Source of the DNA: Selaginella moellendorffii
Taxonomy: Eukaryota > Plantae > Lycopodiophyta
Direction: 5' to 3'
Assembly (NCBI RefSeq): GCF_000143415.4
Contig: NW_003314338.1
Span: 62,001-126,000, forward strand
DNA length: 64,000 bases
The position numbers were made by a program, and so were the translations under genes. Positions 13,909-32,902 of the stretch are shown here, piece by piece (position 1 is the stretch's first letter; the number at the start of each line of letters is the position of its first letter). The notes beneath the pieces are model-generated. The model made no database searches. It was not told the DNA's origin and saw only the letters and a list, made by a program, of their open reading frames with translations.

Positions 13909-14070
13909 ATCTGTACCTCCTTGCAAGTGGCAGGCTCATACTTCCCATTTTGTTGCTTAGATATATAAAGTATTTGCAGTCTGCAATTTAAGTGTAAACA
14001 ACAAATTTCAAGTTGTGAGTTGAGATGGAATATAGAAATAGAATACAGAAACCCTAATTTATATACAGGT

Positions 14071-14244
14071 TGTGAGGGCCAAGTGTACGGCTACGATGCC
14101 GTATACTAATATTAGCATAGTGGATTTTGGTAGCCGTCGGATTGGTTTCAATCCGGACCACTCACTCCTGTATATAAGCTAGGGTTTTTGGGTTAATTGA
14201 TATGCACATTTCTGTATTCCCTTTCCATATTCCATGCACTCACA
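14071..14244 (+). repeat. Family A LTR (174 bp, TGTGAG...CTCACA), 5' copy
   Basis: Matches the copies at 21813-21986(-), 30684-30857 and 32729-32902; contains a TATATAA box. Confidence 0.95.
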
Positions 14245-14245
14245 T

Positions 14246-14262
14246 TGGTGGAGATGAGGGGC
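14246..14262 (+). other. Primer-binding site, tRNA-Ala-like (TGGTGGAGATGAGGGGC)
   Basis: 1 nt after the LTR; complementary, with about 1 mismatch, to the ...CCCCGCAUCUCCA-CCA 3' end typical of plant tRNA-Ala (recalled, not searched). Confidence 0.7.
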
Positions 14263-15172
14263 ACCTTTGATTGTCCCTGGGGAGTGCTTGGATTTGGGAT
14301 TTCGGTTTAGATCTAGCTTTTGCATTGTCTAGATCTAGCTTTTTCCATTTCCTTTCTTTTGTTCTTTCCTTTCAGGATTTTGGTTTAGATCTAGCTTTTT
14401 GCATTGTCTAGATCTACCATTTCTTTCTAGCTTTTTGTCATTTCTCTTCTTTTGCTCTTTCTTTCTCATTCATTTTCATGGCCGATCCGCAATCTCCTCC
14501 TTTGACTCTAGAGCAGCAGTTGGTTCAATTGCTTGATGCTATGCGCCTGCAATTGAACAACCAAACTCAGTTGATGGCGGCATTCACGGCACATGGTACA
14601 ACTCCTCCTGCTTTTGGTGCCAATCCTCGCGTTTGGCCGGAGTTCTTTCGTGGGAATCCTGGGGATGATGTGTACCATTGGTTCGATCACTTCACGGTGA
14701 TTGCCACATATCATTCTTGGGATGATGCTCGGCGTTTGCGTGAGTTCCCCACATGTCTTCAAGGGACGGCATTGCAGTGGTACAATGGATTGAGCGCAGC
14801 TACTCGTGGCGATTGGAGTGTTCTTCCGGACGTCTTCAAACGCGCCTTCGGACACGCCGACGATTGTGATGATGCCTTCCAACAATTGCATCGTCTTCGC
14901 CAAGGGCCATCTGAGTCGGTGATGCAATTTGGCGTTCGTTTCCGAAGTCTTTTGCTTCGTGCGGAACCAAATATGTCGGAGCGGATCAAGCTAGGAATGC
15001 TGTGGCCAGCACTTCGTCAAGATCTTGTCGGACTTGTGCATGCACATTTCTGTATTCCCTTTCCATATTCCATGCACTCACATTGGTGGAGGTGAGGGGC
15101 ACCTTTGATTGTCCCTGGGGAGTGCTTGGATTTGGGATTTCGGTTTAGATCTAGCTTTTGCATTGTCTAGAT

Positions 15173-15212
<40 letters not shown>

Positions 15213-15217
<5 letters not shown>

Positions 15218-18200
15218 GTAAACCTAGCTCTGTTGGTAATATTGGATCATGACCATATAGAAGTTTATATGGTGAAGCACCAACAGAACTCTGCACCCCT
15301 GTAACATAAGCATACCGAAGAGACGGCAAATAACCATCCCAATCCGAATGTTGAAAGTTCACATACTTCGCAATCATCCCTTTGAATGTCCGAACGAGCC
15401 GTTCCACCAGACCGTCTGATTGTGGATGATAAGCACTCGTAAAAGTGTGGCGTATCCCCAACCGAGATGTCAAAACATGAAATACCTCAGCCATAAATGC
15501 AGGACCATTATCCGAAAGAATCCGTTCTGGACAAGAATGCTGGAACACCACTCGATTGAGGAGGAAGTATCCAACAGCAGTTGCAGAGGCACTAGCAAGA
15601 GCACCAACTTCCACCCAACGAGTCAAGTAGTCAGAAGCAATAATAACATACTCATTGCCAGCAGTCGATCGCGGAAAAGGTCCCATAAGATCAAACGCCA
15701 CCAACTCAAACGGACGAGAAACTGCAATTGACTCCAACCGTCCTTCCGCAGCACAAGGGGGAGTATTACGAGCTTGGCACCAAACGCAGCTACGCACATA
15801 CCGGATAATATCACGTCGCATCTCTGGCCAATAGAAAGATCTGCGCAACTTCTCGGTGACACGACGGTGTCCCATATGCCCACCTAGAATAGGAGAATCA
15901 TGGTAGGCATAGAGAAACCGCGGAATAAACACCGAAGGCACCACCAGCCGTAAATGAGCATCAGGATCCGTCCCCACAAAATAAAGAAGGCCATCTTCAA
16001 GGCGATATTGAGAATGTAAATGCCGAAAAGGCAAGTCATCAGCAAGTGATGCAGGATTCTCAAACCCATCTCGAAGCCTTCGAATCCACGGCTCAATCTT
16101 TTGAGCCTCGCGAACCTCATCCAGAGAAGGTAGATCTTGCTCTACGCCCTGTGGACACTGAACGTCAAGGACAGCAACCGCCGACGGCACAGAATCCTCA
16201 TCTAGAAAATCCACAGATGCTGGAACAACAGGTTCATCAGAAACATGAGAAGTGAGTGGAGAAGGAAGAGGAGCTCGAGAAAGGGCATCAGCATCAGCCA
16301 TAGAACTCCCTGGGCGATGAACAACATCGAAATCATATATCTGAAGCTTCAAAGCCCATCGAGCCGTACGACCAACCAGGTTCTTCCGCTTCAATAATGA
16401 AGTAACAGCAGCATGGTCACCTTCAAGTAACGTCCGAGAACCATGTAGATAGGCATGAAGTTTCTCGAAACCCCAGACTGCTGCTAAACACTCCTTCTCC
16501 GTCGTGGAGTAGTTCATCTCCGCTGGTTGTAATGTACGGCTTATGTATGCAATGGGATGGCGCTGACCAGGCACACTTGAGCTCTCTTGCATCAACACAC
16601 CTCCAAGACCAATGTCAGAAGCATCCACGCGCAAAATAAAAGGTCGAGTGTAGTTAGGATATGCCAAAACCGGAGGAGTCGTCAATAGCTCTTTGAGATT
16701 CACGAACGCCCGCTCACAATCGGGAGACCAGATGAAAGATGACGTTGATGACTTCAGCAACGCTCGCAATGGTAAAGTGCGATCGGAAAGATGATCCACA
16801 AAACGACCGAGATACTGCACCTTACCCAAAAAGCGCTGCACATCATTCACACACTTCGGAGTAGGGAACTTTAGAACAGCCACAAGTTTGTCAGGATCAA
16901 CTTGCAAACCCTCACGAGAAATACGGTACCCAAGATAAGTTGTGTCCTTGGACCCAAACACGCACTTCGACCGCTTCAGCTTTAAACCAACGTCGCGTAG
17001 CCGATCCAACACTTTACAAACATCACGAACATGCTCCTCCCACGTCCCCTCCGAGTGGATCAAGACATCATCAATGAAGTCAGCCGTCACCTCTGGCATA
17101 TCGCAAAGAACCTCGTCCATCATTCGCTGAAAAGTTGCTGGAGCATTGTTCAAACCAAACGGCATCACCAAAAACTCGTACAAACCAAATGGTGTACGAA
17201 AAGCAGTCTTAGGAATATCGTCTTCAGCCATCGGTACTTGCCAATACCCAGAAGCAAGATCTAGCTTGGTGAACCAACGACTTCGCCCCAGACGATCCAA
17301 GAGATCAGCAGTGTGAGGAAGAGGGTACACGTCCGGGATCGTCACTTCATTTAACGGACGATAGTCGATGCAGAAACGAATACTCCCATCAGGCTTCGTC
17401 ACAAGATGAGGTTCACATGCCCAAGGACTCCGCGACTTCCGAATAACACCCTTCTCCAACATCTCCTTAACGTTTGCACGTAAAATCTTGATCTCCTTGG
17501 GTGACCGACGACGAACAGGAACCTTGATTGGACGAGCATCCCCGGTTGGAATGGGATGACGTGTGGCAATCTTGGCCCCAGACGATAGGTCAAATTCAAA
17601 GAGATCAGAATACTCCTTCATGAGCTGATCAACAGCTGCAACACAAAGATCATCGGAGGGATCGGAAAAGGGAAGAGCAGAACAAGATGGAAACACAAGA
17701 GGAAATAATGGGGGAACAAAAGTAATGGAAGCAGAGGTAGAAGTAGAGGGACGAAGAGGTACAGAAGTGAGAGGAATGGATGAAACATAAGGAAGTATGA
17801 GACAAGGGGGAAAAGCCTCAAAGTCACACTTGGCATGATTGTGCTGCAACCAATCCATACCAAGAATGAGGTCAAAAGCTTGACTCGGCACCACCCGCAA
17901 CGACTGCAACTCAAGCTCGAGATCGCCCACACGCACAACCAAGTCCGCCTCATCTCGTGCACATGCATGTGTACGGCCGTTGCCATAAAGAATGAAAACT
18001 GGATCCGCCGCACGACGCAAGTGTAGACGACAACGTGTGGCAACAGGTCGAGCAATAGAAGATAAACTCGAACCTGTATCAACCAACACGGAGAGAAGAA
18101 TAGGAGACCTCTTGTTATAAAAACGAGCTTGGAAAGTAAACACTGGATGAACCGGTGCCGAGTGAACCCCTTGATGATACTCCCGAAAGAAAGATGGAGG

Positions 18201-18233
18201 GGTCACTAACTTATTCGCGCAAGGTCCCTCCAT
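15213..18233 (-). pseudogene. Inverted pol copy (PR-RT-RH-INT) truncated in integrase and followed by poly(A)
   Basis: ORF 15213..18368 matches pol up to PTELGLP, then runs into a 37-nt A tract on the minus strand. Confidence 0.9.
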
Positions 18234-19310
18234 TACTCGCGCGACTCCTCGTTTCCCGAATGCACCTCGGTATCCAAACCTTCCACCGCAGCAGCACCAA
18301 CGAGACGTTGCTGACGCCAAGGTCTCCACCCAGGAAATGGAGGTCGCCAATCCGGAAAGCGCCGACAACGCCGGTAAGTATGACCAACTTCATCACACGC
18401 CCAGCAACGAATGTCACGGCCACGACCACGTCCTCGCCCTTGTCCTTGGACTCGAGTAGCAGCAGCATCAACCTCCATGGGAACAGGACCATCACTCACA
18501 GGAAGTGGAGCTGAAGGACGTGTAGCAAGAAGTGGAAGAGGCGACGTCTCATAACGTTGTGCCAAGCGAAGAGCATCGTCAAGAGTGGCAGGAGCAAGTG
18601 CAGTTTCTCCGTACATTACAACCAGCGGAGATGAACTACTCCATGACGGAGAAGGAGTGTTTAGCAGCAGTCTGGGGTTTCGAGAAACTTCATGCCTATC
18701 TACATGGTTCTCGGACGTTACTTGAAGGTGACCATGCTGCTGTTACTTCATTATTGAAGCGGAAGAACCTGGTTGGTCGTACGGCTCGATGGGCTTTGAA
18801 GCTTCAGATATATGATTTCGATGTTGTTCATCGCCCAGGGAGTTCTATGGCTGATGCTGATGCCCTTTCTCGAGCTCCTCTTCCTTCTCCACTCACTTCT
18901 CATGTTTCTGATGAACCTGTTGTTCCAGCATCTGTGGATTTTCTAGATGAGGATTCTGTGCCGTCGGCGGTTGCAGTCCTTGACGTTCAGTGTCCACAGG
19001 GCGTAGAGCAAGATCTACCTTCTCTGGATGAGGTTCGCGAGGCTCAAAAGATTGAGCCGTGGATTCGAAGACTCACATTGGTGGAGATGAGGGGCACCTT
19101 TGATTGTCCCTGGGGAGTGCTTGGATTTGGGATTTCGGTTTAGATCTAGCTTTTGCATTATCTAGATCTAGCTTTTTCCATTTCCTTTCTTTTGTTCTTT
19201 CCTTTCAGGATTTTGGTTTAGATCTAGCTTTTTGCATTGTCTAGATCTACCATTTCTTTCTAGCTTTTTGTCATTTCTCTTCTTTTGCTCTTTCTTTCTC
19301 ATTCATTTTC

Positions 19311-20243
19311 ATGGCCGATCCGCAATCTCCTCCTTTGACTCTAGAGCAGCAGTTGGTTCAATTGCTTGATGCTATGCGCCTGCAATTGAACAACCAAACT
19401 CAGTTGATGGCGGCATTCACGGCACATGGTACAACTCCTCCTGCTTTTGGTGCCAATCCTCGCGTTCGGCCGGAGTTCTTTCGTGGGAATCCTGGGGATG
19501 ATGTGTACCATTGGTTCGATCACTTCACGGTGATTGCCACATATCATTCTTGGGATGATGCTCGGCGTTTGCGTGAGTTCCCCACATGTCTTCAAGGGAC
19601 GGCATTGCAGTGGTACAATGGATTGAGCGCAGCTACTCGTGGCGATTGGAGTGTTCTTCCGGACGTCTTCAAACGCGCCTTCGGACACGCCGACGATTGT
19701 GATGATGCCTTCCAACAATTGCATCGTCTTCGCCAAGGGCCATCTGAGTCGGTGATGCAATTTGGCGTTCGTTTCCGAAGTCTTTTGCTTCGTGCGGAAC
19801 CAAATATGTCGGAGCGGATCAAGCTAGGAATGCTGTGGCCAGCACTTCGTCAAGATCTTGTCGGACTTGTGCATGCACTTGCTCCTGCCACTCTTGACGA
19901 TGCTCTTCGCTTGGCACAACGTTATGAGACATCGCCTCTTCCACTTCTTGCTACACGTCCTTCAGCTCCACTTCCTATGAGTGATGGTCCTGTTCCCATG
20001 GAGGTTGATGCTGCTGCTACTCGAGTCCAAGGACAAGGGCGAGGACGTGGTCGTGGCCGTGACATTCGTTGCTGGGCGTGTGATGAAGTTGGTCATACTT
20101 ATCGGCGTTGTCGGCGCTTTCCGGATTGGCGACCTCCATTTCCTGGGTGGAGACCTTGGCGTCAGCAACGTCCCGTTGGTGCTGCTGCGGTGGAAGGTTT
20201 GGATACCGAGGTGCATTCGGGAAACGAGGAGTCGCGCGAGTAA
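19311..20243 (+). CDS. gag: Retrotransposon Gag (complete copy)
   Basis: 310 aa; capsid-like region LQGTALQWY...LRQG, GPVPMEVD, zinc knuckle CWACDEVGHTYRRC. Confidence 0.9.
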   Translation: MADPQSPPLTLEQQLVQLLDAMRLQLNNQTQLMAAFTAHGTTPPAFGANPRVRPEFFRGNPGDDVYHWFDHFTVIATYHSWDDARRLREFPTCLQGTALQWYNGLSAATRGDWSVLPDVFKRAFGHADDCDDAFQQLHRLRQGPSESVMQFGVRFRSLLLRAEPNMSERIKLGMLWPALRQDLVGLVHALAPATLDDALRLAQRYETSPLPLLATRPSAPLPMSDGPVPMEVDAAATRVQGQGRGRGRGRDIRCWACDEVGHTYRRCRRFPDWRPPFPGWRPWRQQRPVGAAAVEGLDTEVHSGNEESRE

Positions 20244-21812
20244 TGGAGGGACCTTGCGCGAATAAGTTAGTGACCCCTCCATCTTTCTTTCGGGAGTATC
20301 ATCAAGGGGTTCACTCGGCACCGGTTCATCCAGTGTTTACTTTCCAAGCTCGTTTTTATAACAAGAGGTCTCCTCTTCTTCTCTCCGTGTTGGTTGATAC
20401 AGGTTCGAGTTTATCTTCTATTGCTCGACCTGTTGCCACACGTTGTCGTCTACACTTGCGTCGTGCGGCGGATCCAGTTTTCATTCTTTATGGCAACGGC
20501 CGTACACATGCATGTGCACGAGATGAGGCGGACTTGGTTGTGCGTGTGGGCGATCTCGAGCTTGAGTTGCAGTCGTTGCGGGTGGTGCCGAGTCAAGCTT
20601 TTGACCTCATTCTTGGTATGGATTGGTTGCAGCACAATCATGCCAAGTGTGACTTTGAGGCTTTTCCCCCTGGTCTCATACTTCCTTATGTTTCATCCAT
20701 TCCTCTCACTTCTGTACCTCTTCGTCCCTCTACTTCTACCTCTGCTTCCATTACTTTTGTTCCCCCATTATTTCCTCTTGTGTTTCTATCTTGTTCTGCT
20801 CTTCCCTTTTCCGATCCCTCCGATGATCTTTGTGTTGCAGCTGTTGATCAGCTCATGAAGGAGTATTCTGATCTCTTTGAATTTGACCTATCGTCTGGGG
20901 CCAAGATTGCCACACGTCATCCCATTCCAACCGGGGATGCTCGTCCAATCAAGGTTCCTGTTCGTCGTCGGTCACCCAAGGAGATCAAGATTTTACGTGC
21001 AAACGTTAAGGAGATGTTGGAGAAGGGTGTTATTCGGAAGTCGCGGAGTCCTTGGGCATGTGAACCTCATCTTGTGACGAAGCCTGATGGGAGTATTCGT
21101 TTCTGCATCGACTATCGTCCGTTAAATGAAGTTACGATCCCGGACGTGTACCCTCTTCCTCACACTGCTGATCTCTTGGATCGTCTGGGGCGAAGTCGTT
21201 GGTTCACCAAGCTAGATCTTGCTTCTGGGTATTGGCAAGTACCGATGGCTGAAGACGATATTCCTAAGACTGCTTTTCGTACACCATTTGATTTGTACGA
21301 GTTTTTGGTGATGCCGTTTGGTTTGAACAATGCTCCAGCAACTTTTCAGCGAATGATGGACAAGGTTCTTTGCGATATGCCAGAGGTGACGGCTGACTTC
21401 ATTGATGATGTCTTGATCCACTCGGAGGGGACGTGGGAGGAGCATGTTCGTGATGTTTGTAAAGTGTTGGATCGGCTACGCGACGTTGGTTTAAAGCTGA
21501 AGCGGTCGAAGTGCGTGTTTGGGTCCAAGGACACAACTTATCTTGGGTACCGTATTTCTCGTGAGGGTTTGCAAGTTGATCCTGACAAACTTGTGGCTGT
21601 TCTAAAGTTCCCTACTCCGAAGTGTGTGAATGATGTGCAGCGCTTTTTGGGTAAGGTGCAGTATCTCGGTCGTTTTGTGGATCATCTTTCCGATCGCACT
21701 TTACCATTGCGAGCGTTGCTGAAGTCATCAACGTCATCTTTCATCTGGTCTCCCGATTGTGAGCGGGCGTTCGTGAATCTCAAAGAGCTATTGACGACTC
21801 CTCCGGTTTCAA

Positions 21813-21986
21813 TGTGAGTGCATGGAATATGGAAAGGGAATACAGAAATGTGCATATCAATTAACCCAAAAACCCTAGCTTATATACAGGAGTGAGTGGT
21901 CCGGATTGAAACCAATCCGACGGCTACCAAAATCCACTATGCTAATATTAGTATACGGCATCGTAGCCGTACACTTGGCCCTCACA
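21813..21986 (-). repeat. Family A LTR, inverted internal copy
   Basis: Reverse complement of 14071-14244, preceded in element sense by the PPT and INT end. Confidence 0.93.
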
Positions 21987-24900
21987 TCATCCCCTCCTCT
22001 CGGAATCATGGAAGGCCGTCAGGGTTCTCTTGTAGATGGGCCGGGATCTGGAGGAACGTCAGGAGGAGGCATCGGTGGATCTGTAGACGGTATTAACTGC
22101 TCCTGATCCCTCTGTATGAAGCGTTTTAACCGCTGCACATGCACAATCTCTGGAGGATCAGCCTGCTGAACGTCATGCCGAACCTCATAAACTTGTGGTC
22201 CAACTTGCCGCAACACCCGATACGGTCCTTTCCACTGCGCAAGGAGCCCCTTAGATAAACCACGTACCGTAAGATGGGGAAAACGGACTAACACCAAATC
22301 ATCCACTTTGTACTCCGCTGGTGGACGATGATGGGAATTGTAGCGCCGTTGTTGTCCCACTTGTACGCGGCCTAAGTGTTCAGCAGACTCTGCTCGGACA
22401 AGTGGAAGAATGCTTGTCAAATATTGATCCCATGACCTAGCATCAGGAGCTCGTGGCAATCGCGAAGGTAAACCTAGCTCTGTTGGTAATATTGGATCAT
22501 GACCATATAGAAGTTTATATGGTGAAGCACCAACAGAACTCTGCACCCCTGTAACATAAGCATACCGAAGAGACGGCAAATAACCATCCCAATCCGAATG
22601 TTGAAAGTTCACATACTTCGCAATCATCCCTTTGAATGTCCGAACGAGCCGTTCCACCAGACCGTCTGATTGTGGATGATAAGCACTCGTAAAAGTGTGG
22701 CGTATCCCCAACCGAGATGTCAAAACATGAAATACCTCAGCCATAAATGCAGGACCATTATCCGAAAGAATCCGTTCTGGACAAGAATGCTGGAACACCA
22801 CTCGATTGAGGAGGAAGTATCCAACAGCAGTTGCAGAGGCACTAGCAAGAGCACCAACTTCCACCCAACGAGTCAAGTAGTCAGAAGCAATAATAACATA
22901 CTCATTGCCAGCAGTCGATCGCGGAAAAGGTCCCATAAGATCAAACGCCACCAACTCAAACGGACGAGAAACTGCAATTGACTCCAACCGTCCTTCCGCA
23001 GCACAAGGGGGAGTATTACGAGCTTGGCACCAAACGCAGCTACGCACATACCGGATAATATCACGTCGCATCTCTGGCCAATAGAAAGATCTGCGCAACT
23101 TCTCGGTGACACGACGGTGTCCCATATGCCCACCTAGAATAGGAGAATCATGGTAGGCATGGAGAAACCGCGGAATAAACACCGAAGGCACCACCAGCCG
23201 TAAATGAGCATCAGGATCCGTCCCCACAAAATAAAGAAGGCCATCTTCAAGGCGATATTGAGAATGTAAATGCCGAAAAGGCAAGTCATCAGCAAGTGAT
23301 GCAGGATTCTCAAACCCATCTCGAAGCCTTCGAATCCACGGCTCAATCTTTTGAGCCTCGCGAACCTCATCCAGAGAAGGTAGATCTTGCTCTACGCCCT
23401 GTGGACACTGAACGTCAAGGACAGCAACCGCCGACGGCACAGAATCCTCATCTAGAAAATCCACAGATGCTGGAAGAACAGGTTCATCAGAAACATGAGA
23501 AGTGAGTGGAGAAGGAAGAGGAGCTCGAGAAAGGGCATCAGCATCAGCCATAGAACTCCCTGGGCGATGAACAACATCGAAATCATATATCTGAAGAAAG
23601 ATGGAGGGGTCACTAACTTATTCGCGCAAGGTCCCTCCATTACTCGCGCGACTCCTCGTTTCCCGAATGCACCTCGGTATCCAAACCTTCCACCGCAGCA
23701 GCACCAACGGGACGTTGCTGACGCCAAGGTCTCCACCCAGGAAATGGAGGTCGCCAATCCGGAAAGCTGTTCCAACATCCGATAAGTATGACCAACTTCA
23801 TCACACGCCCAGCAACGAATGTCACGGCCACGACCACGTCCTCGCCCTTGTCCTTGGACTCGAGTAACAGCAGCATGGTCACCTTCAAGTAACGTCCGAG
23901 AACCATGTAGATAGGCATGAAGTTTCTCGAAACCCCAGACTGCTGCTAAACACTCCTTCTCCGTCGTGGAGTAGTTCATCTCCGCTGGTTGTAATGTACG
24001 GCTTATGTATGCAATGGGATGGCGCTGACCAGGCACACTTGAGCTCTCTTGCATCAACACACCTCCAAGACCAATGTCAGAAGCATCCACGCGCAAAATA
24101 AAAGGTCGAGTGTAGTTAGGATATGCCAAAACCGGAGGAGTCGTCAATAGCTCTTTGAGATTCACGAACGCCCGCTCACAATCGGGAGACCAGATGAAAG
24201 ATGACGTTGATGACTTCAGCAACGCTCGCAATGGTAAAGTGCGATCGGAAAGATGATCCACAAAACGACCGAGATACTGCACCTTACCCAAAAAGCGCTG
24301 CACATCATTCACACACTTCGGAGTAGGGAACTTTAGAACAGCCACAAGTTTGTCAGGATCAACTTGCAAACCCTCACGAGAAATACGGTACCCAAGATAA
24401 GTTGTGTCCTTGGACCCAAACACGCACTTCGACCGCTTCAGCTTTAAACCAACGTCGCGTAGCCGATCCAACACTTTACAAACATCACGAACATGCTCCT
24501 CCCACGTCCCCTCCGAGTGGATCAAGACATCATCAATGAAGTCAGCCGTCACCTCTGGCATATCGCAAAGAACCTCGTCCATCATTCGCTGAAAAGTTGC
24601 TGGAGCATTGTTCAAACCAAACGGCATCACCAAAAACTCGTACAAACCAAATGGTGTACGAAAAGCAGTCTTAGGAATATCGTCTTCAGCCATCGGTACT
24701 TGCCAATACCCAGAAGCAAGATCTAGCTTGGTGAACCAACGACTTCGCCCCAGACGATCCAAGAGATCAGCAGTGTGAGGAAGAGGGTACACGTCCGGGA
24801 TCGTCACTTCATTTAACGGACGATAGTCGATGCAGAAACGAATACTCCCATCAGGCTTCGTCACAAGATGAGGTTCACATGCCCAAGGACTCCGCGACTT

Positions 24901-26254
24901 CCGAATAACACCCTTCTCCAACATCTCCTTAACGTTTGCACGTAAAATCTTGATCTCCTTGGGTGACCGACGACGAACAGGAACCTTGATTGGACGAGCA
25001 TCCCCGGTTGGAATGGGATGACGTGTGGCAATCTTGGCCCCAGACGATAGGTCAAATTCAAAGAGATCAGAATACTCCTTCATGAGCTGATCAACAGCTG
25101 CAACACAAAGATCATCGGAGGGATCGGAAAAGGGAAGAGCAGAACAAGATGGAAACACAAGAGGAAATAATGGGGGAACAAAAGTAATGGAAGCAGAGGT
25201 AGAAGTAGAGGGACGAAGAGGTACAGAAGTGAGAGGAATGGATGAAACATAAGGAAGTATGAGACAAGGGGGAAAAGCCTCAAAGTCACACTTGGCATGA
25301 TTGTGCTGCAACCAATCCATACCAAGAATGAGGTCAAAAGCTTGACTCGGCACCACCCGCAACGACTGCAACTCAAGCTCGAGATCGCCCACACGCACAA
25401 CCAAGTCCGCCTCATCTCGTGCACATGCATGTGTACGGCCGTTGCCATAAAGAATGAAAACTGGATCCGCCGCACGACGCAAGTGTAGACGACAACGTGT
25501 GGCAACAGGTCGAGCAATAGAAGATAAACTCGAACCTGTATCAACCAACACGGAGAGAAGAATAGGAGACCTCTTGTTATAAAAACGAGCTTGGAAAGTA
25601 AACACTGGATGAACCGGTGCCGAGTGAACCCCTTGATGATACTCCCGAAAGAAAGATGGAGGGGTCACTAACTTATTCGCGCAAGGTCCCTCCATTACTC
25701 GCGCGACTCCTCGTTTCCCGAATGCACCTCGGTATCCAAACCTTCCACCGCAGCAGCACCAACGGGACGTTGCTGACGCCAAGGTCTCCACCCAGGAAAT
25801 GGAGGTCGCCAATCCGGAAAGCGCCGACAACGCCGATAAGTATGACCAACTTCATCACACGCCCAGCAACAAATGTCACGGCCACGACCACGTCCTCGCC
25901 CTTGTCCTTGGACTCGAGTAGCAGCAGCATCAACCTCCATGGGAACAGGACCATCACTTGTGCATGCACTTGCTCCTGCCGCTCTTGACGATGCTCTTCG
26001 CTTGGCACAACGTTATGAGACGTCGCCTCTTCCACTTCTTGCTACACGTCCTTCAACTCCACTTCCTATGAGTGATGGTCCTGTTCCCATGGAGGTTGAT
26101 GCTGCTGCTACTCGAGTCCAAGGGCGAGGACGTGGTCGTGGCCGTGACATTCGTTGCTGACGCCAAGGTCTCCACCCAGGAAATGGAGGTCGCCAATCCG
26201 GAAAGCGCCGACAACGCCGATAAGTATGACCAACTTCATCACACGCCCATTTTC

Positions 26255-27187
26255 ATGGCCGATCCGCAATCTCCTCCTTTGACTCTAGAGCAGCAGTTGG
26301 TTCAATTGCTTGATGCTATGCGCCTGCAATTGAACAACCAAACTCAGTTGATGGCGGCATTCACGGCACATGGTACAACTCCTCCTGCTTTTGGTGCCAA
26401 TCCTCGCGTTCGGCCGGAGTTCTTTTGTGGGAATCCTAGGGATGATGTGTACCATTGGTTCGATCACTTCACGGTGATTGCCACATATCATTCTTGGGAT
26501 GATGCTCGGCGTTTGCGTGAGTTCCCCACATGTCTTCAAGGGACGGCATTGCAGTGGTACAATGGATTGAGCGCAGCTACTCGTGGCGATTGGAGTGTTC
26601 TTCCGGACGTCTTCAAACGCGCCTTCGGACACGCCGACGATTGTGATGATGCCTTCCAACAATTGCATCGTCTTCGCCAAGGGCCATCTGAGTCGGTGAT
26701 GCAATTTGGCGTTCGTTTCCGAAGTCTTTTGCTTCGTGCGGAACCAAATATGTCGGAGCGGATCAAGCTAGGAATGCTGTGGCCAGCACTTCGTCAAGAT
26801 CTTGTCGGACTTGTGCATGCACTTGCTCCTGCCACTCTTGACGATGCTCTTCGCTTGGCACAACGTTATGAGACGTCGCCTCTTCCACTTCTTGCTACAC
26901 GTCCTTCAGCTCCACTTCCTATGAGTGATGGTCCTGTTCCCATGGAGGTTGATGCTGCTGCTACTCGAGTCCAAGGACAAGGGCGAGGACGTGGTCGTGG
27001 CCGTGACATTCGTTGCTGGGCGTGTGATGAAGTTGGTCATACTTATCGGCGTTGTCGGCGCTTTCCGGATTGGCGACCTCCATTTCCTGGGTGGAGACCT
27101 TGGTGTCAGCAACGTCCCGTTGGTGCTGCTGCGGTGGAAGGTTTGGATACCGAGGTGCATTCGGGAAACGAGGAGTCGCGCGAGTAA
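26255..27187 (+). CDS. gag: Retrotransposon Gag (complete copy)
   Basis: Same 310-aa protein as 19311-20243 with a few substitutions. Confidence 0.9.
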   Translation: MADPQSPPLTLEQQLVQLLDAMRLQLNNQTQLMAAFTAHGTTPPAFGANPRVRPEFFCGNPRDDVYHWFDHFTVIATYHSWDDARRLREFPTCLQGTALQWYNGLSAATRGDWSVLPDVFKRAFGHADDCDDAFQQLHRLRQGPSESVMQFGVRFRSLLLRAEPNMSERIKLGMLWPALRQDLVGLVHALAPATLDDALRLAQRYETSPLPLLATRPSAPLPMSDGPVPMEVDAAATRVQGQGRGRGRGRDIRCWACDEVGHTYRRCRRFPDWRPPFPGWRPWCQQRPVGAAAVEGLDTEVHSGNEESRE

Positions 27188-27226
27188 TGGAGGGACCTTG
27201 CGCGAATAAGTTAGTGACCCCTCCAT
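27163..27226 (+). promoter_or_regulatory. -1 programmed ribosomal frameshift signal (G GGA AAC plus H-type pseudoknot)
   Basis: Heptamer in correct gag phase, 6-nt spacer, stem 1 27176-27184/27197-27205, stem 2 27187-27194/27219-27226; pol is in the -1 frame. Confidence 0.82.
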
Positions 27227-30200
27227 CTTTCTTTCGGGAGTATCATCAAGGGGTTCACTCGGCACCGGTTCATCCAGTGTTTACTTTCCAAGCTCGTTTT
27301 TATAACAAGAGGTCTCCTATTCTTCTCTCCGTGTTGGTTGATACAGGTTCGAGTTTATCTTCTATTGCTCGACCTGTTGCCACACGTTGTCGTCTACACT
27401 TGCGTCGTGCGGCGGATCCAGTTTTCATTCTTTATGGCAACGGCCGTACACATGCATGTGCACGAGATGAGGCGGACTTGGTTGTGCGTGTGGGCGATCT
27501 CGAGCTTGAGTTGCAGTCGTTGCGGGTGGTGCCGAGTCAAGCTTTTGACCTCATTCTTGGTATGGATTGGTTGCAGCACAATCATGCCAAGTGTGACTTT
27601 GAGGCTTTTCCCCCTTGTCTCATACTTCCTTATGTTTCATCCATTCCTCTCACTTCTGTACCTCTTCGTCCCTCTACTTCTACCTCTGCTTCCATTACTT
27701 TTGTTCCCCCATTATTTCCTCTTGTGTTTCCATCTTGTTCTGCTCTTCCCTTTTCCGATCCCTCTGATGATCTTTGTGTTGCAGCTGTTGATCAGCTCAT
27801 GAAGGAGTATTCTGATCTCTTTGAATTTGACCTATCGTCTGGGGCCAAGATTGCCACACGTCATCCCATTCCAACCGGGGATGCTCGTCCAATCAAGGTT
27901 CCTGTTCGTCGTCGGTCACCCAAGGAGATCAAGATTTTACGTGCAAACGTTAAGGAGATGTTGGAGAAGGGTGTTATTCGGAAGTCGCGGAGTCCTTGGG
28001 CATGTGAACCTCATCTTGTGACGAAGCCTGATGGGAGTATTCGTTTCTGCATCGACTATCGTCCGTTAAATGAAGTGACGATCCCGGACGTGTACCCTCT
28101 TCCTCACACTGCTGATCTCTTGGATCGTCTGGGGCGAAGTCGTTGGTTCACCAAGCTAGATCTTGCTTCTGGGTATTGGCAAGTACCGATGGCTGAAGAC
28201 GATATTCCTAAGACTGTTTTTCGTACACCATTTGGTTTGTACGAGTTTTTGGTGATGCCGTTTGGTTTGAACAATGCTCCAGCAACTTTTCAGCGAATGA
28301 TGGACGAGGTTCTTTGCGATATGCCAGAGGTGACGGCTGACTTCATTGATGATGTCTTGATCCACTCGGAGGGGACGTGGGAGGAGCATGTTCGTGATGT
28401 TTGTAAAGTGTTGGATCGGCTACGCGACGTTGGTTTAAAGCTGAAGCGGTCGAAGTGCGTGTTTGGGTCCAAGGACACAACTTATCTTGGGTACCGTATT
28501 TCTCGTGAGGGTTTGCAAGTTGATCCTGACAAACTTGTGGCTGTTCTAAAGTTCCCTACTCCGAAGTGTGTGAATGATGTGCAGCGCTTTTTGGGTAAGG
28601 TGCAGTATCTCGGTCGTTTTGTGGATCATCTTTCCGATCGCACTTTACCATTGCGAGCGTTGCTGAAGTCATCAACGTCATCTTTCATCTGGTCTCCCGA
28701 TTGTGAGCGGGCGTTCGTGAATCTCAAAGAGCTATTGACGACTCCTCCGGTTTTGGCATATCCTGACTACACTCGACCTTTTATTTTGTGCGTGGATGCT
28801 TCTGACATTGGTCTTGGAGGTGTGTTGATGCAAGAGAGCTCAAGTGTGCCTGGTCAGCGCCATCCCATTGCATACATAAGCCGTACATTACAACCAGCGG
28901 AGATGAACTACTCCACGACGGAGAAGGAGTGTTTAGCAGCAGTCTGGGGTTTCGAGAAACTTCATGCCTATCTACATGGTTCTCGGACGTTACTTGAAGG
29001 TGACCATGCTGCTGTTACTTCATTATTGAAGCGGAAGAACCTGGTTGGTCGTACGGCTCGATGGGCTTTGAAGCTTCAGATATATGATTTCGATGTTGTT
29101 CATCGCCCAGGGAGTTCTATGGCTGATGCTGATGCCCTTTCTCGAGCTCCTCTTCCTTCTCCACTCACTTCTCATGTTTCTGATGAACCTGTTGTTCCAG
29201 CATCTGTGGATTTTCTAGATGAGGATTCTGTGCCGTCGGCGGTTGCTGTCCTTGACGTTCAGTGTCCACAGGGCGTAGAGCAAGATCTACCTTCTCTGGA
29301 TGAGGTTCGCGAGGCTCAAAAGATTGAGCCGTGGATTCGAAGGCTTCGAGATGGGTTTGAGAATCCTGCATCACTTGCTGATGACTTGCCTTTTCGGCAT
29401 TTACATTCTCAATATCGCCTTGAAGATGGCCTTCTTTATTTTGTGGGGACGGATCCTGATGCTCATTTATGGCTGGTGGTGCCTTCGGTGTTTATTCCGC
29501 GGTTTCTCCATGCCTACCATGATTCTCCTATTCTAGGTGGGCATATGGGACACCGTCGTGTCACCGAGAAGTTGCGCAGATCTTTCTATTGGCCAGAGAT
29601 GCGACGTGATATTATCCGGTATGTGCGTAGCTGCGTTTGGTGCCAAGCTCGTAATACTCCCCCTTGTGCTGCGGAAGGACGGTTGGAGTCAATTGCAGTT
29701 TCTCGTCCGTTTGAGTTGGTGGCGTTTGATCTTATGGGACCTTTTCCGCGATCGACTGCTGGCAATGAGTATGTTATTATTGCTTCTGACTACTTGACTC
29801 GTTGGGTGGAAGTTGGTGCTCTTGCTAGTGCCTCTGCAACTGCTGTTGGATACTTCCTCCTCAATCGAGTGGTGTTCCAGCATTCTTGTCCAGAACGGAT
29901 TCTTTCGGATAATGGTCCTGCATTTATGGCTGAGGTATTTCATGTTTTGACATCTCGGTTGGGGATACGCCACACTTTTACGAGTGCTTATCATCCACAA
30001 TCAGACGGTCTGGTGGAACGGCTCGTTCGGACATTCAAAGGGATGATTGCGAAGTATGTGAACTTTCAACATTCGGATTGGGATGGTTATTTGCCGTCTC
30101 TTCGGTATGCTTATGTTACAGGGGTGCAGAGTTCTGTTGGTGCTTCACCATATAAACTTCTATATGGTCATGATCCAATATTACCAACAGAGCTAGGTTT

Positions 30201-30651
30201 ACCTTCGCGATTGCCACGAGCTCCTGATGCTAGGTCATGGGATCAATATTTGACAAGCATTCTTCCACTTGTCCGAGCAGAGTCTGCTGAACACTTAGGC
30301 CGCGTACAAGTGGGACAACAACGGCGCTACAATTCCCATCATCGTCCACCAGCGGAGTACAAAGTGGATGATTTGGTGTTAGTCCGTTTTCCCCATCTTA
30401 CGGTACGTGGTTTATCTAAGGGGCTCCTTGCGCAGTGGAAAGGACCGTATCGGGTGTTGCGGCAAGTTGGACCACAAGTTTATGAGGTTCGGCATGACGT
30501 TCAGCAGGCTGATCCTCCAGAGATTGTGCATGTGCAGCAGTTAAAACGCTTCATACAGAGGGATCAGGAGCAGTTAATACCGTCTACAGATCCACCGATG
30601 CCTCCTCCTGACGTTCCTCCAGATCCCGGCCCATCTACAAGAGAACCTTGA
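27163..30651 (+). CDS. pol: Retrotransposon Pol (PR-RT-RNase H-INT), full-length uninterrupted frame
   Basis: PR VLVDTGSS and ILGMDWL; RT RFCIDYRPLN, LDLASGYWQ, MPFGLNNAPATFQ, FIDD; RH VDASD/EKE/GDH; INT HHCC, D-D(35)-E, GPY motif; no chromodomain. Gypsy domain order. Confidence 0.95.
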   Translation, partial: GKRGVARVMEGPCANKLVTPPSFFREYHQGVHSAPVHPVFTFQARFYNKRSPILLSVLVDTGSSLSSIARPVATRCRLHLRRAADPVFILYGNGRTHACARDEADLVVRVGDLELELQSLRVVPSQAFDLILGMDWLQHNHAKCDFEAFPPCLILPYVSSIPLTSVPLRPSTSTSASITFVPPLFPLVFPSCSALPFSDPSDDLCVAAVDQLMKEYSDLFEFDLSSGAKIATRHPIPTGDARPIKVPVRRRSPKEIKILRANVKEMLEKGVIRKSRSPWACEPHLVTKPDGSIRFCIDYRPLNEVTIPDVYPLPHTADLLDRLGRSRWFTKLDLASGYWQVPMAEDDIPKTVFRTPFGLYEFLVMPFGLNNAPATFQRMMDEVLCDMPEVTADFIDDVLIHSEGTWEEHVRDVCKVLDRLRDVGLKLKRSKCVFGSKDTTYLGYRISREGLQVDPDKLVAVLKFPTPKCVNDVQRFLGKVQYLGRFVDHLSDRTLPLRALLKSSTSSFIWSPDCERAFVNLKELLTTPPVLAYPDYTRPFILCVDASDIGLGGVLMQESSSVPGQRHPIAYISRTLQPAEMNYSTTEKECLAAVWGFEKLHAYLHGSRTLLEGDHAAVTSLLKRKNLVGRTARWALKLQIYDFDVVHRPGSSMADADALSRAPLPSPLTSHVSDEPVVPASVDFLDEDSVPSAVAVLDVQCPQGVEQDLPSLDEVREAQKIEPWIRRLRDGFENPASLADDLPFRHLHSQYRLEDGLLYFVGTDPDAHLWLVVPSVFIPRFLHAYHDSPILGGHMGHRRVTEKLRRSFYWPEMRRDIIRYVRSCVWCQARNTPPCAAEGRLESIAVSRPFELVAFDLMGPFPRSTAGNEYVIIASDYLTRWVEVGALASASATAVGYFLLNRVVFQHSCPERILSDNGPAFMAEVFHVLTSRLGIRHTFTSAYHPQSDGLVERLVRTFKGMIAKYVNFQHSDWDGYLPSLRYAYVTGVQSSVGASPYKLLYGHDPILPTELGLPSRLPRAPDARSWDQYLTSILPLVRAESAEHLGRVQVGQQRRYNSHHRPPAEYKVDDLVLVRFPHLTVRGLSKGLLAQWKGPYRVLRQVGPQVYEVRHDVQQADPPEIVHVQQLKRFIQRDQEQLIPSTDPPMPPPDVPPDPGPSTREP

Positions 30652-30668
30652 CGGCCTTCCATGATTCC

Positions 30669-30680
30669 GAGAGGAGGGGA
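30669..30680 (+). other. Polypurine tract GAGAGGAGGGGA
   Basis: Ends 3 nt before the LTR at 30684; same arrangement before 32729. Confidence 0.85.
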
Positions 30681-30683
30681 TGA

Positions 30684-30857
30684 TGTGAGGGCCAAGTGTA
30701 CGGCTACGATGCCGTATACTAATATTAGCATAGTGGATTTTGGTAGCCGTCGGATTGGTTTCAATCCGGACCACTCACTCCTGTATATAAGCTAGGGTTT
30801 TTGGGTTAATTGATATGCACATTTCTGTATTCCCTTTCCATATTCCATGCACTCACA
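30684..30857 (+). repeat. Family A LTR, internal copy
   Basis: Matches 14071-14244. Confidence 0.95.
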
Positions 30858-32728
30858 TTTGGAGGTGTGTTGATGCAAGAGAGCTCAAGTGTGCCTGGTC
30901 AGCGCCATCCCATTGCATACATAAGCCGTACATTACAACCAGCGGAGATGAACTACTCCACGACGGAGAAGGAGTGTTTAGCAGCAGTCTGGGGTTTCGA
31001 GAAACTTCATGCCTATCTACATGGTTCTCGGACGTTACTTGAAGGTGACCATGCTGCTGTTACTTCATTATTGAAGCGGAAGAACCTGGTTGGTCGTACG
31101 GCTCGATGGGCTTTGAAGCTTCAGATATATGATTTCGATGTTGTTCATCGCCCAGGGAGTTCTATGGCTGATGCTGATGCCCTTTCTCGAGCTCCTCTTC
31201 CTTCTCCACTCACTTCTCATGTTTCTGATGAACCTGTTGTTCCAGCATCTGTGGATTTTCTAGATGAGGATTCTGTGCCGTCGGCGATTGCTGTCCTTGA
31301 CGTTCAGTGTCCACAGGGCGTAGAGCAAGATCTACCTTCTCTGGATGAGGTTCGCGAGGCTCAAAAGATTGAGCCATGGATTCAAAGGCTTCGAGATGGG
31401 TTCTAGAATCCTGCATCACTTGCTGATGACTTGCCTTTTCGGCATTTACATTCTCAATATCGCCTTGAAGATGGCCTTCTTTATTTTGTGGGGACGGATC
31501 CTGATGCTCATTTACGGCTGGTGGTGCCTTCGGTGTTTATTCCGCGGTTTCTCCATGCCTACCATGATTCTCCTATTCTAGGTGGGCATATGGGACACCG
31601 TCGTGTCACCGAGAAGTTGCGCAGATCTTTCTATTGGCCAGAGATGCGACGTGATATTATCCGGTATGTGCGTAGCTGCGTTTGGTGCCAAGCTCGTAAT
31701 ACTCCCCCTTGTGCTGCGGAAGGACGGTTGGAGTCAATTGCAGTTTCTCGTCCGTTTGAGTTGGTGGCGTTTGATCTTATGGGACCTTTTCCGCGATCGA
31801 CTGCTGGCAATGAGTATGTTATTATTGCTTCTGACTACTTGACTCGTTGGGTGGAAGTTGGTGCTCTTGTTAGTGCCTCTGCAACTGCTGTTGGATACTT
31901 CCTCCTCAATCGAGTGGTGTTCCAGCATTCTTGTCCAGAACGGATTCTTTCGGATAATGGTCCTGCATTTATGGCTGAGGTATTTCATGTTTTGACATCT
32001 CGGTTGGGGATACGCCACACTTTTACGAGTGCTTATCATCCACAATCAGACGGTCTGGTGGAACGGCTCGTTCGGACATTCAAAGGGATGATTGCGAAGT
32101 ATGTGAACTTTCAACATTCGGATTGGGATGGTTATTTGCCGTCTCTTCGGTATGCTTATGTCACAGGGGTGCAGAGTTCTGTTGGTGCTTCACCATATAA
32201 ACTTCTATATGGTCATGATCCAATATTACCAATAGAGCTGGGTTTACCTTCGCGATTGCCACGAGCTCCTGATGCTAGGTCATGGGATCAATATTTGACA
32301 AGCATTCTTCCACTTGTCCGAGCAGAGTCTGCTGAACACTTAGGCCGCATACAAGTGGGACAACAACGGCGCTACAATTCCCATCATCGTCCACCAGCGG
32401 AGTACAAAGTGGATGATTTGGTGTTAGTCCGTTTTCCCCATCTTACGGTACGTGGTTTATCTAAGGGGCTCCTTGCGCAGTGGAAAGGACCGTATCGGGT
32501 GTTGCGGCAAGTTGGACCACAAGCTTATGAGGTTCGGCATGACGTTCAGCAGGCTGATCCTCCAGAGATTGTGCATGTGCAGCGGTTAAAACGCTTCATA
32601 CAGAGGGATCAGGAGCAGTTAATACCGTCTACAGATCCACCGATGCCTCCTCCTGACGTTCCTCCAGATCCCGGCCCATCTACAAGAGAACCCTGACGGC
32701 CTTCCATGATTCCGAGAGGAGGGGATGA

Positions 32729-32902
32729 TGTGAGGGCCAAGTGTACGGCTACGATGCCGTATACTAATATTAGCATAGTGGATTTTGGTAGCCGTCGGAT
32801 TGGTTTCAATCCGGACCACTCACTCCTGTATATAAGCTAGGGTTTTTGGGTTAATTGATATGCACATTTCTGTATTCCCTTTCCATATTCCATGCACTCA
32901 CA
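32729..32902 (+). repeat. Family A LTR, terminal 3' copy
   Basis: Matches 14071-14244 and is followed by TSD AGGT. Confidence 0.95.

What the first reader, a model, noticed from the sequence alone, without database searches (positions are those of the whole stretch)
14071..32902. One integration event carrying an 18.8-kb scrambled, strand-switching concatemer of a 5-kb retrotransposon
Seen: about 11 near-identical segments: (+)14071-15045 LTR-gag; (+)15040-15180 U5-PBS-UTR; (-)15215-18602 INT to gag; (+)18609-19070 RH; (+)19071-21809 PBS-gag-RT; (-)21810-23596 LTR-INT-RH; (-)23594-23865 gag/pol border; (-)23863-25958 RH to gag; (+)25956-26159 gag; (-)26152-26249 gag; (+)26248-30857 gag-pol-LTR; (+)30858-32902 RH-INT-LTR. 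Most junctions have 2-14 nt microhomology (ATGCAC, AAG, AGTA.CAGCAGCAT, ACT, CGTTGCTG, CA). I found no internal TSDs, so this does not look like ordinary nesting, yet the outer LTR ends are intact and share one TSD (AGGT). Inference: serial template switching among RNA/cDNA templates of both polarities made a giant cDNA that integrase still inserted. Post-insertion microhomology-mediated break-induced replication is the alternative.
Basis: partly seen in the sequence, partly recalled or inferred. Interest (0 to 1): 0.85.

Follow-up and report, generated by a model that had tools for sequence, protein, structure and literature searches.

The report
Scrambled retrotransposon concatemer in Selaginella
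An 18.8-kb stretch of the spikemoss Selaginella moellendorffii genome is a patchwork of 13 forward and backward pieces of one 5-kb Ty3/gypsy retrotransposon, built in a single episode from faulty reverse-transcription products and sitting in the chromosome like one normal insertion.

Summary
Window 14071-32902 tiles completely into 12 pieces, plus an 11-nt thirteenth, of one 5,012-nt Ty3/gypsy unit.

- **Source.** The window is Selaginella moellendorffii v1.0 scaffold GL377642.1, a gap-free Sanger contig.
- **Ends.** The outer LTR ends are intact and flanked by AGGT on both sides. The target is the LTR of an older, related, oppositely oriented element, which reads through with one AGGT.
- **One source, one episode.** All 39 variable sites among the pieces are singletons and none is shared. 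Twenty-five are C>T or G>A, 14 of them at CpG, and non-synonymous to synonymous is 27:10. The pieces started identical and then decayed in place.
- **Reverse-transcription products were used.** Two internal junctions sit on the unprocessed cDNA right end (CA plus TT or TTG). One junction is a 37-T run, the poly(A) tail of an RNA cut at unit 4358. One piece starts 31-36 nt after the LTR's TATA box.
- **Junction signature.** Microhomology is far above chance, and one filler is templated.

DNA-only MMBIR and ordinary nesting fit poorly. Whether the concatemer formed before integration or at a freshly inserted copy cannot be decided. No read-level check of the assembly was possible.

The parts
14067..14070 (.). 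Left copy of the 4-bp target-site duplication AGGT
   Evidence: Pre-insertion continuity of the host LTR with a single copy is shown.
14071..15045 (+). S1: unit 1-975. It holds the 5' LTR (174 nt TG..CA plus TT), the PBS starting TGGTGGAG, the leader and the 5' part of gag. Its left end is an intact LTR terminus.
15040..15182 (+). S2: unit 132-274 (end of LTR, PBS, leader). It is joined to S1 through ATGCAC. Its left edge lies 31-36 nt downstream of the LTR's TATATAA, the probable RNA 5' end.
   Evidence: LTR sequence
15178..15214 (+). Uninterrupted run of 37 T. Five are unit 270-274 and 32 are not in the unit. It is the complement of a poly(A) tail attached after unit 4358.
15215..18602 (-). 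S3: unit 4358 down to 971 (integrase back to gag), with an open 1051-aa ORF
18599..18609 (+). An 11-nt exact copy of unit 3847-3857. It is a templated micro-insertion that supplies the 6-nt filler 18603-18608, flanked by 4-nt and 1-nt microhomologies.
18609..19070 (+). S4: unit 3034-3495 (RNase H region). It joins S5 bluntly.
19071..21809 (+). S5: unit 168-2906 (last 9 nt of the LTR, PBS, gag, PR, RT)
21810..23596 (-). S6: a 3' LTR with its unprocessed cDNA end (CA plus TTG, at 21810-21812 in reverse complement) down to unit 3227. The LTR terminus is joined to unit 2906 of S5.
23594..23876 (-). S7: unit 1386 down to 1105 (gag/pol overlap), with a small indel and substitution cluster
23863..25958 (-). 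S8: unit 3172 down to 1077. It is joined to S7 through a 14-nt homeology with one mismatch.
25956..26159 (+). S9: unit 962-1171, with a 6-nt deletion and two substitutions
26152..26249 (-). S10: unit 1267 down to 1170. It is joined to S9 through the 8-nt inverted repeat CGTTGCTG.
26248..30859 (+). S11: unit 401-5012. This is the longest piece, with open gag and a 1199-aa pol ORF (PR, RT, RH, INT). It ends on the unprocessed LTR end (CA plus TT), which is joined to unit 2967.
30859..32902 (+). S12: unit 2967-5010 (RH, INT, 3' LTR). Its right end is a processed CA terminus. It carries the most private changes, including one stop codon.
32903..32906 (.). Right copy of the target-site duplication AGGT
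14014..14070 (-). 3' part of the LTR of the older related element B (minus orientation), the host of the insertion. It contains B's TATA box.
   Evidence: aligns to unit 96-174
32907..36081 (-). Rest of element B: the LTR 5' part (to 33030), the PPT-like tract, and a degenerate integrase/RNase H region 75-77% identical to the unit

Best explanation
This is a dead-on-arrival insertion, present on one haplotype only, of a young Ty3/gypsy retrotransposon of Selaginella moellendorffii. Instead of one 5-kb copy, 13 pieces of that element (3.75 unit lengths) were stitched together on both strands in one episode. The building material was extrachromosomal reverse-transcription products of a single source copy. 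It included full-length cDNA ends that integrase had not yet trimmed, a copy of an RNA prematurely polyadenylated at unit 4358, and a piece that starts at the probable RNA 5' end. The stitching used low-processivity, error-prone template switching and/or end joining guided by 0-14 nt of homology. Switches concentrate in the gag/pol overlap region. The product has one correct left LTR end and one correct right LTR end. It was inserted by integrase with a 4-bp duplication (AGGT), 4 bp upstream of the TATA box in the LTR of an older related element. It has since decayed neutrally, mainly by CpG deamination, to about 0.2% per piece. Shown here: the tiling, the junctions, the TSD, the single source and the involvement of cDNA and RNA. 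Inferred: the order of events. I lean slightly towards assembly before integration, by reverse-transcriptase template switching in a particle that held a 3'-truncated RNA lacking the normal strand-transfer acceptor. The alternative is patching of a break in a freshly integrated copy, and sequence alone cannot separate the two. Its long inverted arms (1.8-3.4 kb, spacers of about 1-2.3 kb) would give hairpin RNA if transcribed, so it could act as a silencing source against its own family. That last point is untested.
For: Tiling and identities. Junction sequences and microhomology: with chance p=4e-4 and 4e-7. Element type (PR-RT-RH-INT). PBS and PPT. TSD and host LTR continuity. Single source and single time: 39 variable sites, all singletons, 0 shared. 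In-genome neutral decay: 25 of 39 are C>T or G>A, 14 of those 25 lie at CpG against a 22% background, and non-synonymous to synonymous is 27:10 with one stop. cDNA-only nucleotides at two internal LTR termini: CA plus TT and CA plus TTG, matching unit 175-177. Two of 24 junction end-points fall within 3 nt of the cDNA end, p about 1e-4. T37 with no A- or T-run at unit 4358. S2's edge lies 31-36 nt after TATATAA (LTR sequence). Templated 11-nt filler. Extra changes in the short pieces S7 and S9. End-point cluster: 9 of 24 in 425 nt, scan p=0.005. Real genomic context: the window is 100% identical to GL377642.1 and has no N. The junction overlaps of 0-14 nt are too short to be assembler joins. 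Extra nucleotides found only in cDNA are the accepted marker of Ty1 replication intermediates captured at breaks (PMC11372161).
Against: No reads, mate pairs or second assembly could be consulted. Pieces longer than a Sanger read (up to 4.6 kb at 99.5-99.9% identity) could be mis-ordered. No other copy of the family could be retrieved, so the usual TSD length and the frequency of such structures are unknown; the closest protein in two libraries is 49-52% identical. The other haplotype lacks the host element at this point, so there is no true empty site. Private mutations are unevenly spread: plus-oriented pieces 0.31% against minus-oriented 0.08% (p=5e-4), and S12 0.54%. A strictly simultaneous origin does not predict this. 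An 18.8-kb double-stranded product is much larger than a particle built for two 5-kb RNAs would be expected to hold. The polyadenylation site and the transcription start are inferred from sequence only.
Confidence: 0.62

Rival explanations
1. Purely DNA-level, post-insertion replicative rearrangement. One normal chromosomal copy was amplified and scrambled by microhomology-mediated break-induced replication or fork template switching, in the manner of chromoanasynthesis. No cDNA or RNA took part.
For: Microhomology of 2-14 nt, a templated 11-nt insertion, runs of short pieces followed by long ones, extra mutations in short pieces, both orientations, and a single source sequence. All of these are typical of MMBIR (PMC13065848, listed). 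The outer ends and TSD stay intact under this model.
Against: In the chromosome the 3' LTR is followed by flank, not by TT or TTG. Two junction end-points on that exact cDNA terminus have p about 1e-4. A pure 37-T run attached to unit 4358 has no chromosomal template. S2 starts at the probable RNA 5' end.
Confidence: 0.1
2. Sequential ordinary events. Eight or more copies of the same family inserted into one another in both orientations. About twelve illegitimate (microhomology) deletions then removed all inner LTR ends and TSDs.
For: Microhomology deletions are the usual way plants trim LTR retrotransposons (established knowledge). The concatemer itself sits in the LTR of a related element, so self-targeting is conceivable. 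S6 and S7 could be one element with one deletion.
Against: It needs at least 8 insertions into one 5-kb target plus about 12 deletions within the time taken for 0.2% divergence. There is no shared variant and no age gradient that fits a nesting order. The structure has one left LTR terminus against three right termini. The internal termini are not joined CA-to-target: TTG matches 3 of 3 cDNA nucleotides and 0 of 3 of the target at J5/6. T37 stays unexplained.
Confidence: 0.05
3. Assembly artefact. The junctions are real, but they belong to several rearranged copies at different loci, or are in a different order, and the 2010 Sanger assembler chained them into one locus.
For: Pieces of up to 4.6 kb at 99.5-99.9% identity exceed read length. 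The uneven private-mutation density could reflect mis-binned reads. No independent data were reachable.
Against: The contig is gap-free across 64 kb. The junction overlaps of 0-14 nt are far below any assembler overlap, so each junction lies inside sequenced clones. All 12 junctions are element-to-element, unlike random chimeric clones. Short pieces tie 3-4 junctions together within one read length (25956-26249). Each piece has its own CpG-type private changes, as expected of distinct genomic copies.
Confidence: 0.12

Closest known systems
Capture of Ty1 cDNA and replication intermediates at chromosomal double-strand breaks in yeast (PMC11372161; earlier work by Teng/Gabriel and Moore/Haber recalled from memory)
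   Same: Pieces of an LTR retrotransposon are joined by short or no homology. [quoted passage not shown] Incomplete replication intermediates are used, and reverse transcriptase may prime from a DNA end.
   Different: Those insertions are short patches at an induced break and have no TSD. Here there are 13 pieces totalling 18.8 kb, all from one element, bounded by correct LTR ends and a 4-bp duplication.
Defective retroviral proviruses with internal inversions or 'scrambled' order, attributed to reverse-transcriptase template switching (a category in HIV provirus pipelines; papers listed were not read in detail)
   Same: Integrase-type ends with internal deletions, inversions and strand switches that arose during reverse transcription.
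   Different: Those proviruses are generally described as defective through internal deletion, hypermutation or inversion (recalled; sizes not checked). This one is 3.75 units with up to five-fold coverage of some regions, and it includes a poly(A)-tailed internal piece.
Rearranged endogenous plant pararetroviruses (PMC9868043, title and abstract seen)
   Same: Scrambled integrated arrays of reverse-transcribing elements in plant genomes, with tandem and inverted fragments. They have been proposed as hairpin sources for RNA-based immunity.
   Different: Pararetroviruses have no integrase and enter by illegitimate recombination, without LTR ends or a TSD.
MMBIR / FoSTeS / chromoanasynthesis (PMC13065848)
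   Same: Serial microhomology-guided switches, templated insertions, mixed orientations and local hypermutation.
   Different: The templates there are chromosomal DNA in cis. Here three or four junctions carry features that exist only in cDNA or RNA.
Mu killer of maize (PMC3440606)
   Same: A naturally rearranged, partly inverted derivative of an active transposon whose hairpin transcript can silence the family.
   Different: Mu killer derives from a DNA transposon and its silencing has been shown genetically. Here hairpin transcription and silencing are only a possibility.
Head-to-tail multimeric Ty arrays and LTR-int-LTR-int-LTR recombinants (recalled from memory)
   Same: More than one unit of an LTR retrotransposon at one site.
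   Different: Those are ordered, same-strand arrays sharing whole LTRs. This one is scrambled, on both strands, with breakpoints inside coding regions.

Membership tests
Ty3/gypsy (Metaviridae) LTR retrotransposon | pol domain order protease - reverse transcriptase - RNase H - integrase, plus a gag | tested here: met
   Pfam on the 1199-aa ORF gives gag-asp_proteas, RVT_1, RT_RNaseH(_2), Integrase_H2C2, rve and Integrase_p58_C. The gag ORF hits Retrotrans_gag.
Ty3/gypsy (Metaviridae) LTR retrotransposon | Direct LTRs ending TG..CA, a PBS next to the 5' LTR, a polypurine tract before the 3' LTR, and a 4-6 bp TSD | tested here: met
   Four identical LTR copies of 174 nt (TGTGAG..CTCACA). The PBS starts TGG one nucleotide after the CA. 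The PPT is GAGAGGAGGGGA. The TSD is AGGT. The primer tRNA was not identified: no tRNA gene lies in the window, and the resemblance to a tRNA-Ala 3' end comes from memory only.
Ty3/gypsy (Metaviridae) LTR retrotransposon | Chromodomain at the integrase C-terminus (chromovirus subgroup) | tested here: not met
   No PF00385 hit at E<=0.001. Only Integrase_p58_C and a weak SH3_Tf2-1 were found.
Ordinary nested LTR-retrotransposon insertion | The inner element has both LTR termini, joined CA-to-target, with a TSD inside the host element whose two halves are contiguous | tested here: not met
   The structure has one left terminus and three right termini. The two internal termini carry TT or TTG rather than target sequence. 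No internal TSD exists. The test is met only for the whole concatemer inside element B.
Autointegration or intermolecular integration into another cDNA | A processed CA-3' end joined directly to an internal site, with a paired junction 4 bp away | tested here: not met
   J5/6 and J11/12 keep the unprocessed nucleotides and have no partner junction.
MMBIR / chromoanasynthesis on chromosomal templates | Microhomology junctions, templated insertions and mixed orientation | tested here: met
MMBIR / chromoanasynthesis on chromosomal templates | All copied sequence exists in the chromosome near the break | tested here: not met
   Neither the T37 run nor an LTR end followed by TT(G) and then internal sequence has a chromosomal template.
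cDNA capture at a double-strand break | cDNA-only nucleotides at LTR-end junctions, and 0-few nt of homology | tested here: met
   criterion as used in PMC11372161.
cDNA capture at a double-strand break | Outer borders formed by end joining, with no TSD and truncated ends | tested here: not met
   The outer borders are exact LTR termini with a 4-bp TSD. This model can therefore apply only to the interior of an already integrated copy.
Hairpin-type transposon silencer (Mu killer-like) | Long inverted duplication of transposon coding sequence | tested here: met
   Arms of 1,936 bp (16667-18602 vs 19874-21809), 1,830 bp, 2,096 bp (23863-25958 vs 26924-29019) and 3,388 bp at 99.5-99.9% identity.
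Hairpin-type transposon silencer (Mu killer-like) | Read-through transcript, derived siRNAs, and family silencing in trans | not testable with these tools
   No expression or small-RNA data were available.

The most novel reading that the evidence does not exclude
Integrase inserted, in one event, a cDNA almost four unit lengths long. That cDNA had been built by at least 12 serial template switches among RNA and DNA templates of both polarities. The trigger was a packaged genomic RNA that was prematurely polyadenylated and so lacked the normal strand-transfer acceptor. The product is a ready-made hairpin locus against its own family. A single replication accident would then create both a giant insertion and a potential silencer.
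Probability: 0.25. Interest if true: 0.8.

Novelty: new variant of a known kind. Interest (0 to 1): 0.55.

Why it matters
If the assembly is right, this locus is a well-preserved molecular fossil of aberrant reverse transcription in a plant. It preserves untrimmed cDNA ends, a poly(A) tail on an internally truncated RNA, a templated filler and error-rich short pieces, all inside one integrase-type insertion.

It bears on three questions:
- How large and how disordered a cDNA an LTR-retrotransposon integrase can insert.
- Whether reverse transcriptase, rather than host replication, can produce chromoanasynthesis-like patterns.
- How inverted-repeat silencer loci against an active retrotransposon family can arise spontaneously.

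It is also a caution for TE annotation. Nesting-based parsers would misread such loci. It remains a single case in a 2010 Sanger assembly, so its weight depends on read-level confirmation and on finding more examples.

Tried and rejected
- **Other copies of the family.** The pol ORF finds nothing above 49-52% identity in either protein library. An exact look-up of the S5 gag product found nothing. No canonical copy or second scrambled copy could be compared.
- **Empty site in the other haplotype.** I walked from Sec15 and the sorbitol-dehydrogenase gene to GL377668.1. Homology at 98% stops at window 14011, 2 nt before element B. The next 6.2 kb are other repeats. Further walking failed because the 624-aa ORF is not on record. 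One search was my own coordinate slip on the minus strand and was corrected.
- **Central polypurine tract.** I looked for one to explain the 2906-3227 breakpoint cluster and found none at the break sites.
- **RNA structure in the gag/pol overlap.** I tested it as a pausing cause; z=-1.37, not significant.
- **S7 indel cluster as a templated insertion.** Only a 9-mer matches, which is chance level.
- **Two-step model** (plus-strand pieces first, minus-strand pieces later). Removing the minus pieces restores no continuity, and the model predicts shared variants that are absent.
- **The two 624-aa ORFs downstream** are unrelated to each other.
- **No joined, consensus or repaired unit was built.** Unit coordinates were mapped onto natural pieces S1 and S11. 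The host is a lycophyte, neither human nor a crop.
Full report
**Where the window comes from.** The flanking Sec15 ORF is 99% identical to a Selaginella moellendorffii protein. The DNA fetched around the neighbouring sorbitol-dehydrogenase gene (L002, GCA_000143415.2, scaffold GL377642.1) is 100% identical to window 1-20316. The window is therefore S. moellendorffii v1.0, a Sanger whole-genome assembly that holds both haplotypes. It contains no N. It is not human and not a crop. The second haplotype (GL377668.1; L001, L003) is 98.3% identical up to window 14011 and then unrelated for at least 6.2 kb.

**The observation.** I used unit coordinates mapped onto S1 (unit 1-975) and S11 (unit 401-5012) and built no joined or consensus element. 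The unit is 5,012 nt. The LTRs are 174 nt (TG..CA) plus two nucleotides. The PBS begins TGG one nucleotide after the CA, and a polypurine tract precedes the 3' LTR. The pol order is protease, RT, RNase H, integrase, so the element is Ty3/gypsy. The long pieces are 99.3-100% identical. S7 and S9 are 96-97% identical with small indels.

**Junctions.**
- J1/2 has 6 nt of microhomology.
- J2/3 shares five T and then runs into a 37-T tract.
- J3/4 carries a 6-nt filler. With its flanks it is an 11-nt exact copy of unit 3847-3857, a thirteenth, templated piece.
- J4/5 is blunt.
- J5/6 has one extra nucleotide.
- J6/7 has 3 nt, J7/8 has 14 nt with one mismatch, J8/9 has 3 nt, J9/10 has 8 nt, J10/11 has 2 nt and J11/12 has 1 nt.
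- Seven of 11 junctions with at least 2 nt, and three with at least 6 nt, are far beyond chance (p=4e-4 and 4e-7).
- End-points are not uniform. Nine of 24 fall in unit 962-1386 (scan p=0.005). Three fall within 14 nt of a perfect 10-nt palindrome at unit 966-975 (p about 0.05).
- That region is not unusually structured as RNA (z=-1.37).

**Ends and target.** The left end is an intact LTR start and the right end a CA terminus. AGGT flanks both. The flanks belong to the LTR of an older, related element B in the opposite orientation (14014-14070 and 32907-33030, with its body extending to about 36081 at 75-77% identity). Aligned to the family's own LTR, the two halves of B's LTR abut when AGGT is counted once, 4 bp upstream of B's TATA box. 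This stands in for an empty site, because the other haplotype lacks B here.

**One source, one time.** Across 17,884 polarisable positions (depth of at least 3) there are 39 variable sites. Every one is private to a single piece and none is shared. Twenty-five are C>T or G>A. Fourteen of these lie at CpG, against a 22% background. Non-synonymous to synonymous is 27:10, with one stop codon in S12. These are unconstrained mutations acquired in methylated chromosomal DNA. They are not differences between functional source copies, and the spectrum is not what random base-calling errors would be expected to give. The pieces were therefore identical when made. This rules out long-term stepwise duplication, which would leave shared variants. 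It also argues against a blend of diverged genomic copies.

**Evidence that reverse-transcription products were the substrate.**
1. S6 and S11 end on the LTR terminus followed by TTG and TT. These nucleotides follow the CA only in unintegrated cDNA (they equal unit 175-177). At J5/6 they match the target in 0 of 3 positions. Two of 24 end-points within 3 nt of that terminus has p about 1e-4. The same criterion identifies Ty1 replication intermediates captured at breaks (PMC11372161).
2. In sense orientation S3 reads unit 971-4358 followed by 37 A. The unit has CGCG at that point, so the run is not templated by the element. Read on the plus strand, S2 ends in five T, runs through 32 more T, and continues as antisense from 4358. 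That is what a T-ended DNA 3' end priming on the poly(A) tail of a prematurely polyadenylated RNA would give.
3. S2 starts at unit 132-137, which is 31-36 nt after TATATAA at 101-107. This is the expected RNA 5' end (inference from sequence).
4. The short pieces S7 and S9 carry about five changes where about one is expected, and none of them is CpG-type. This fits error-prone synthesis around the switches.

**What this excludes.**
- A purely chromosomal MMBIR cannot supply the T run or the cDNA-only nucleotides.
- Ordinary nesting fails. There is one left terminus against three right termini, and no CA-to-target junction or internal TSD. At least 8 insertions plus about 12 deletions would be needed within 0.2% divergence.
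- Autointegration fails because the internal termini are unprocessed.
- An assembler cannot create joins with 0-14 nt of overlap, and random chimeric clones would not be element-to-element 12 times out of 12. The order of pieces longer than a read remains unverified.

**What stays open.** The sequence does not say whether the concatemer was complete before integration or was assembled at a freshly integrated copy.
That fits a compartment holding only its templates. A packaged RNA lacking the 3' repeat would also force illegitimate strand transfers.
- Against it: the product is 3.75 unit lengths. The two run-off junctions imply opposite directions of synthesis if a single polymerase path is assumed.
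- For a repair route: the junction types are mixed (blunt, microhomology, templated filler), as in end joining. S1 plus S12 show a weak excess of private changes (p=0.011).
- The strongest unexplained pattern is that plus-oriented pieces carry 0.31% private changes against 0.08% for minus-oriented ones (p=5e-4, post hoc). A two-step origin does not simplify the structure and predicts shared variants that are absent.

**Possible consequence.** The block contains inverted arms of 1.8-3.4 kb at 99.5-99.9% identity, with spacers of about 1-2.3 kb. If transcribed from the S1 LTR or by read-through, it would give long hairpin RNA against gag, RT and integrase. This resembles Mu killer (PMC3440606) and the rearranged endogenous pararetroviruses proposed as RNA-based immunity (PMC9868043). 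It was not tested here.

**Comparison and verdict.** Each ingredient is known: RT template switching, cDNA capture, microhomology joining and integrase TSDs. In five literature searches and from memory I found no description of an LTR retrotransposon insertion that combines several unit lengths, both strands, cDNA-only junctions and a clean TSD. I rate it a new variant of a known kind, of moderate interest. It needs read-level confirmation and a genome-wide census that these tools could not provide. The family is absent from the protein libraries (best 49-52% identity) and exact look-ups found nothing.

Noticed in passing
window 14014-14070 and 32907-36081: An older, degenerate element B of a related family (75-77% identical), in minus orientation, hosts the insertion. 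It appears truncated near the RT/RNase H region and no second LTR was found. Homology with the other haplotype ends 2 nt before its edge.
   Followed up: partly
window 34800-35051: About 21 tandem copies of a 12-nt unit (GGACTCGGTCTC-like) lie inside element B, within a 98-aa minus-strand ORF.
   Followed up: no
window 45387-47029, 50637-51475, 59463-61283; L001 1-2412; L003 15600-17320: One dispersed repeat family (80-90% identity, both orientations) with internal short tandem repeats. It is present on both haplotypes at different places.
   Followed up: no
window 52446-54320 (-) and 57582-59456 (+): Two intact 624-aa ORFs. The first carries DUF7869 and the second has no Pfam hit. They are unrelated to each other, and the first is not on record as a called gene.
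   Followed up: partly
window 14071-32902 (private mutations): Plus-oriented pieces have about four times the private-mutation density of minus-oriented pieces (33 in 10,518 nt against 6 in 7,366 nt, p=5e-4). S12 is the most mutated and carries a stop codon. No explanation was found.
   Followed up: partly
unit 132-137, 164-169 and 970-975 (e.g. window 14202-14207, 14234-14239, 15040-15045): The hexamer ATGCAC occurs three times in the unit, the third time inside the palindrome GTGCATGCAC. Five junction end-points (units 132, 168, 962, 971, 975) lie at or next to these copies.
   Followed up: partly
proteins P0362-P0366: The representative library holds 2-3.5 kaa 'proteins' from other genomes that match this pol in 5-8 separate stretches. 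These are gene models that run through several pol copies. They may be nested or concatenated elements elsewhere.
   Followed up: no
window 1-14000 versus 32000-44000: GC content falls from 64% in a compact gene cluster (Sec15, AAA ATPase, WD40, uridine kinase, sorbitol dehydrogenase, beta-adaptin) to 33-43% in the repeat-rich region. The insertion lies about 160 nt beyond the annotated end of the adaptin gene.
   Followed up: no
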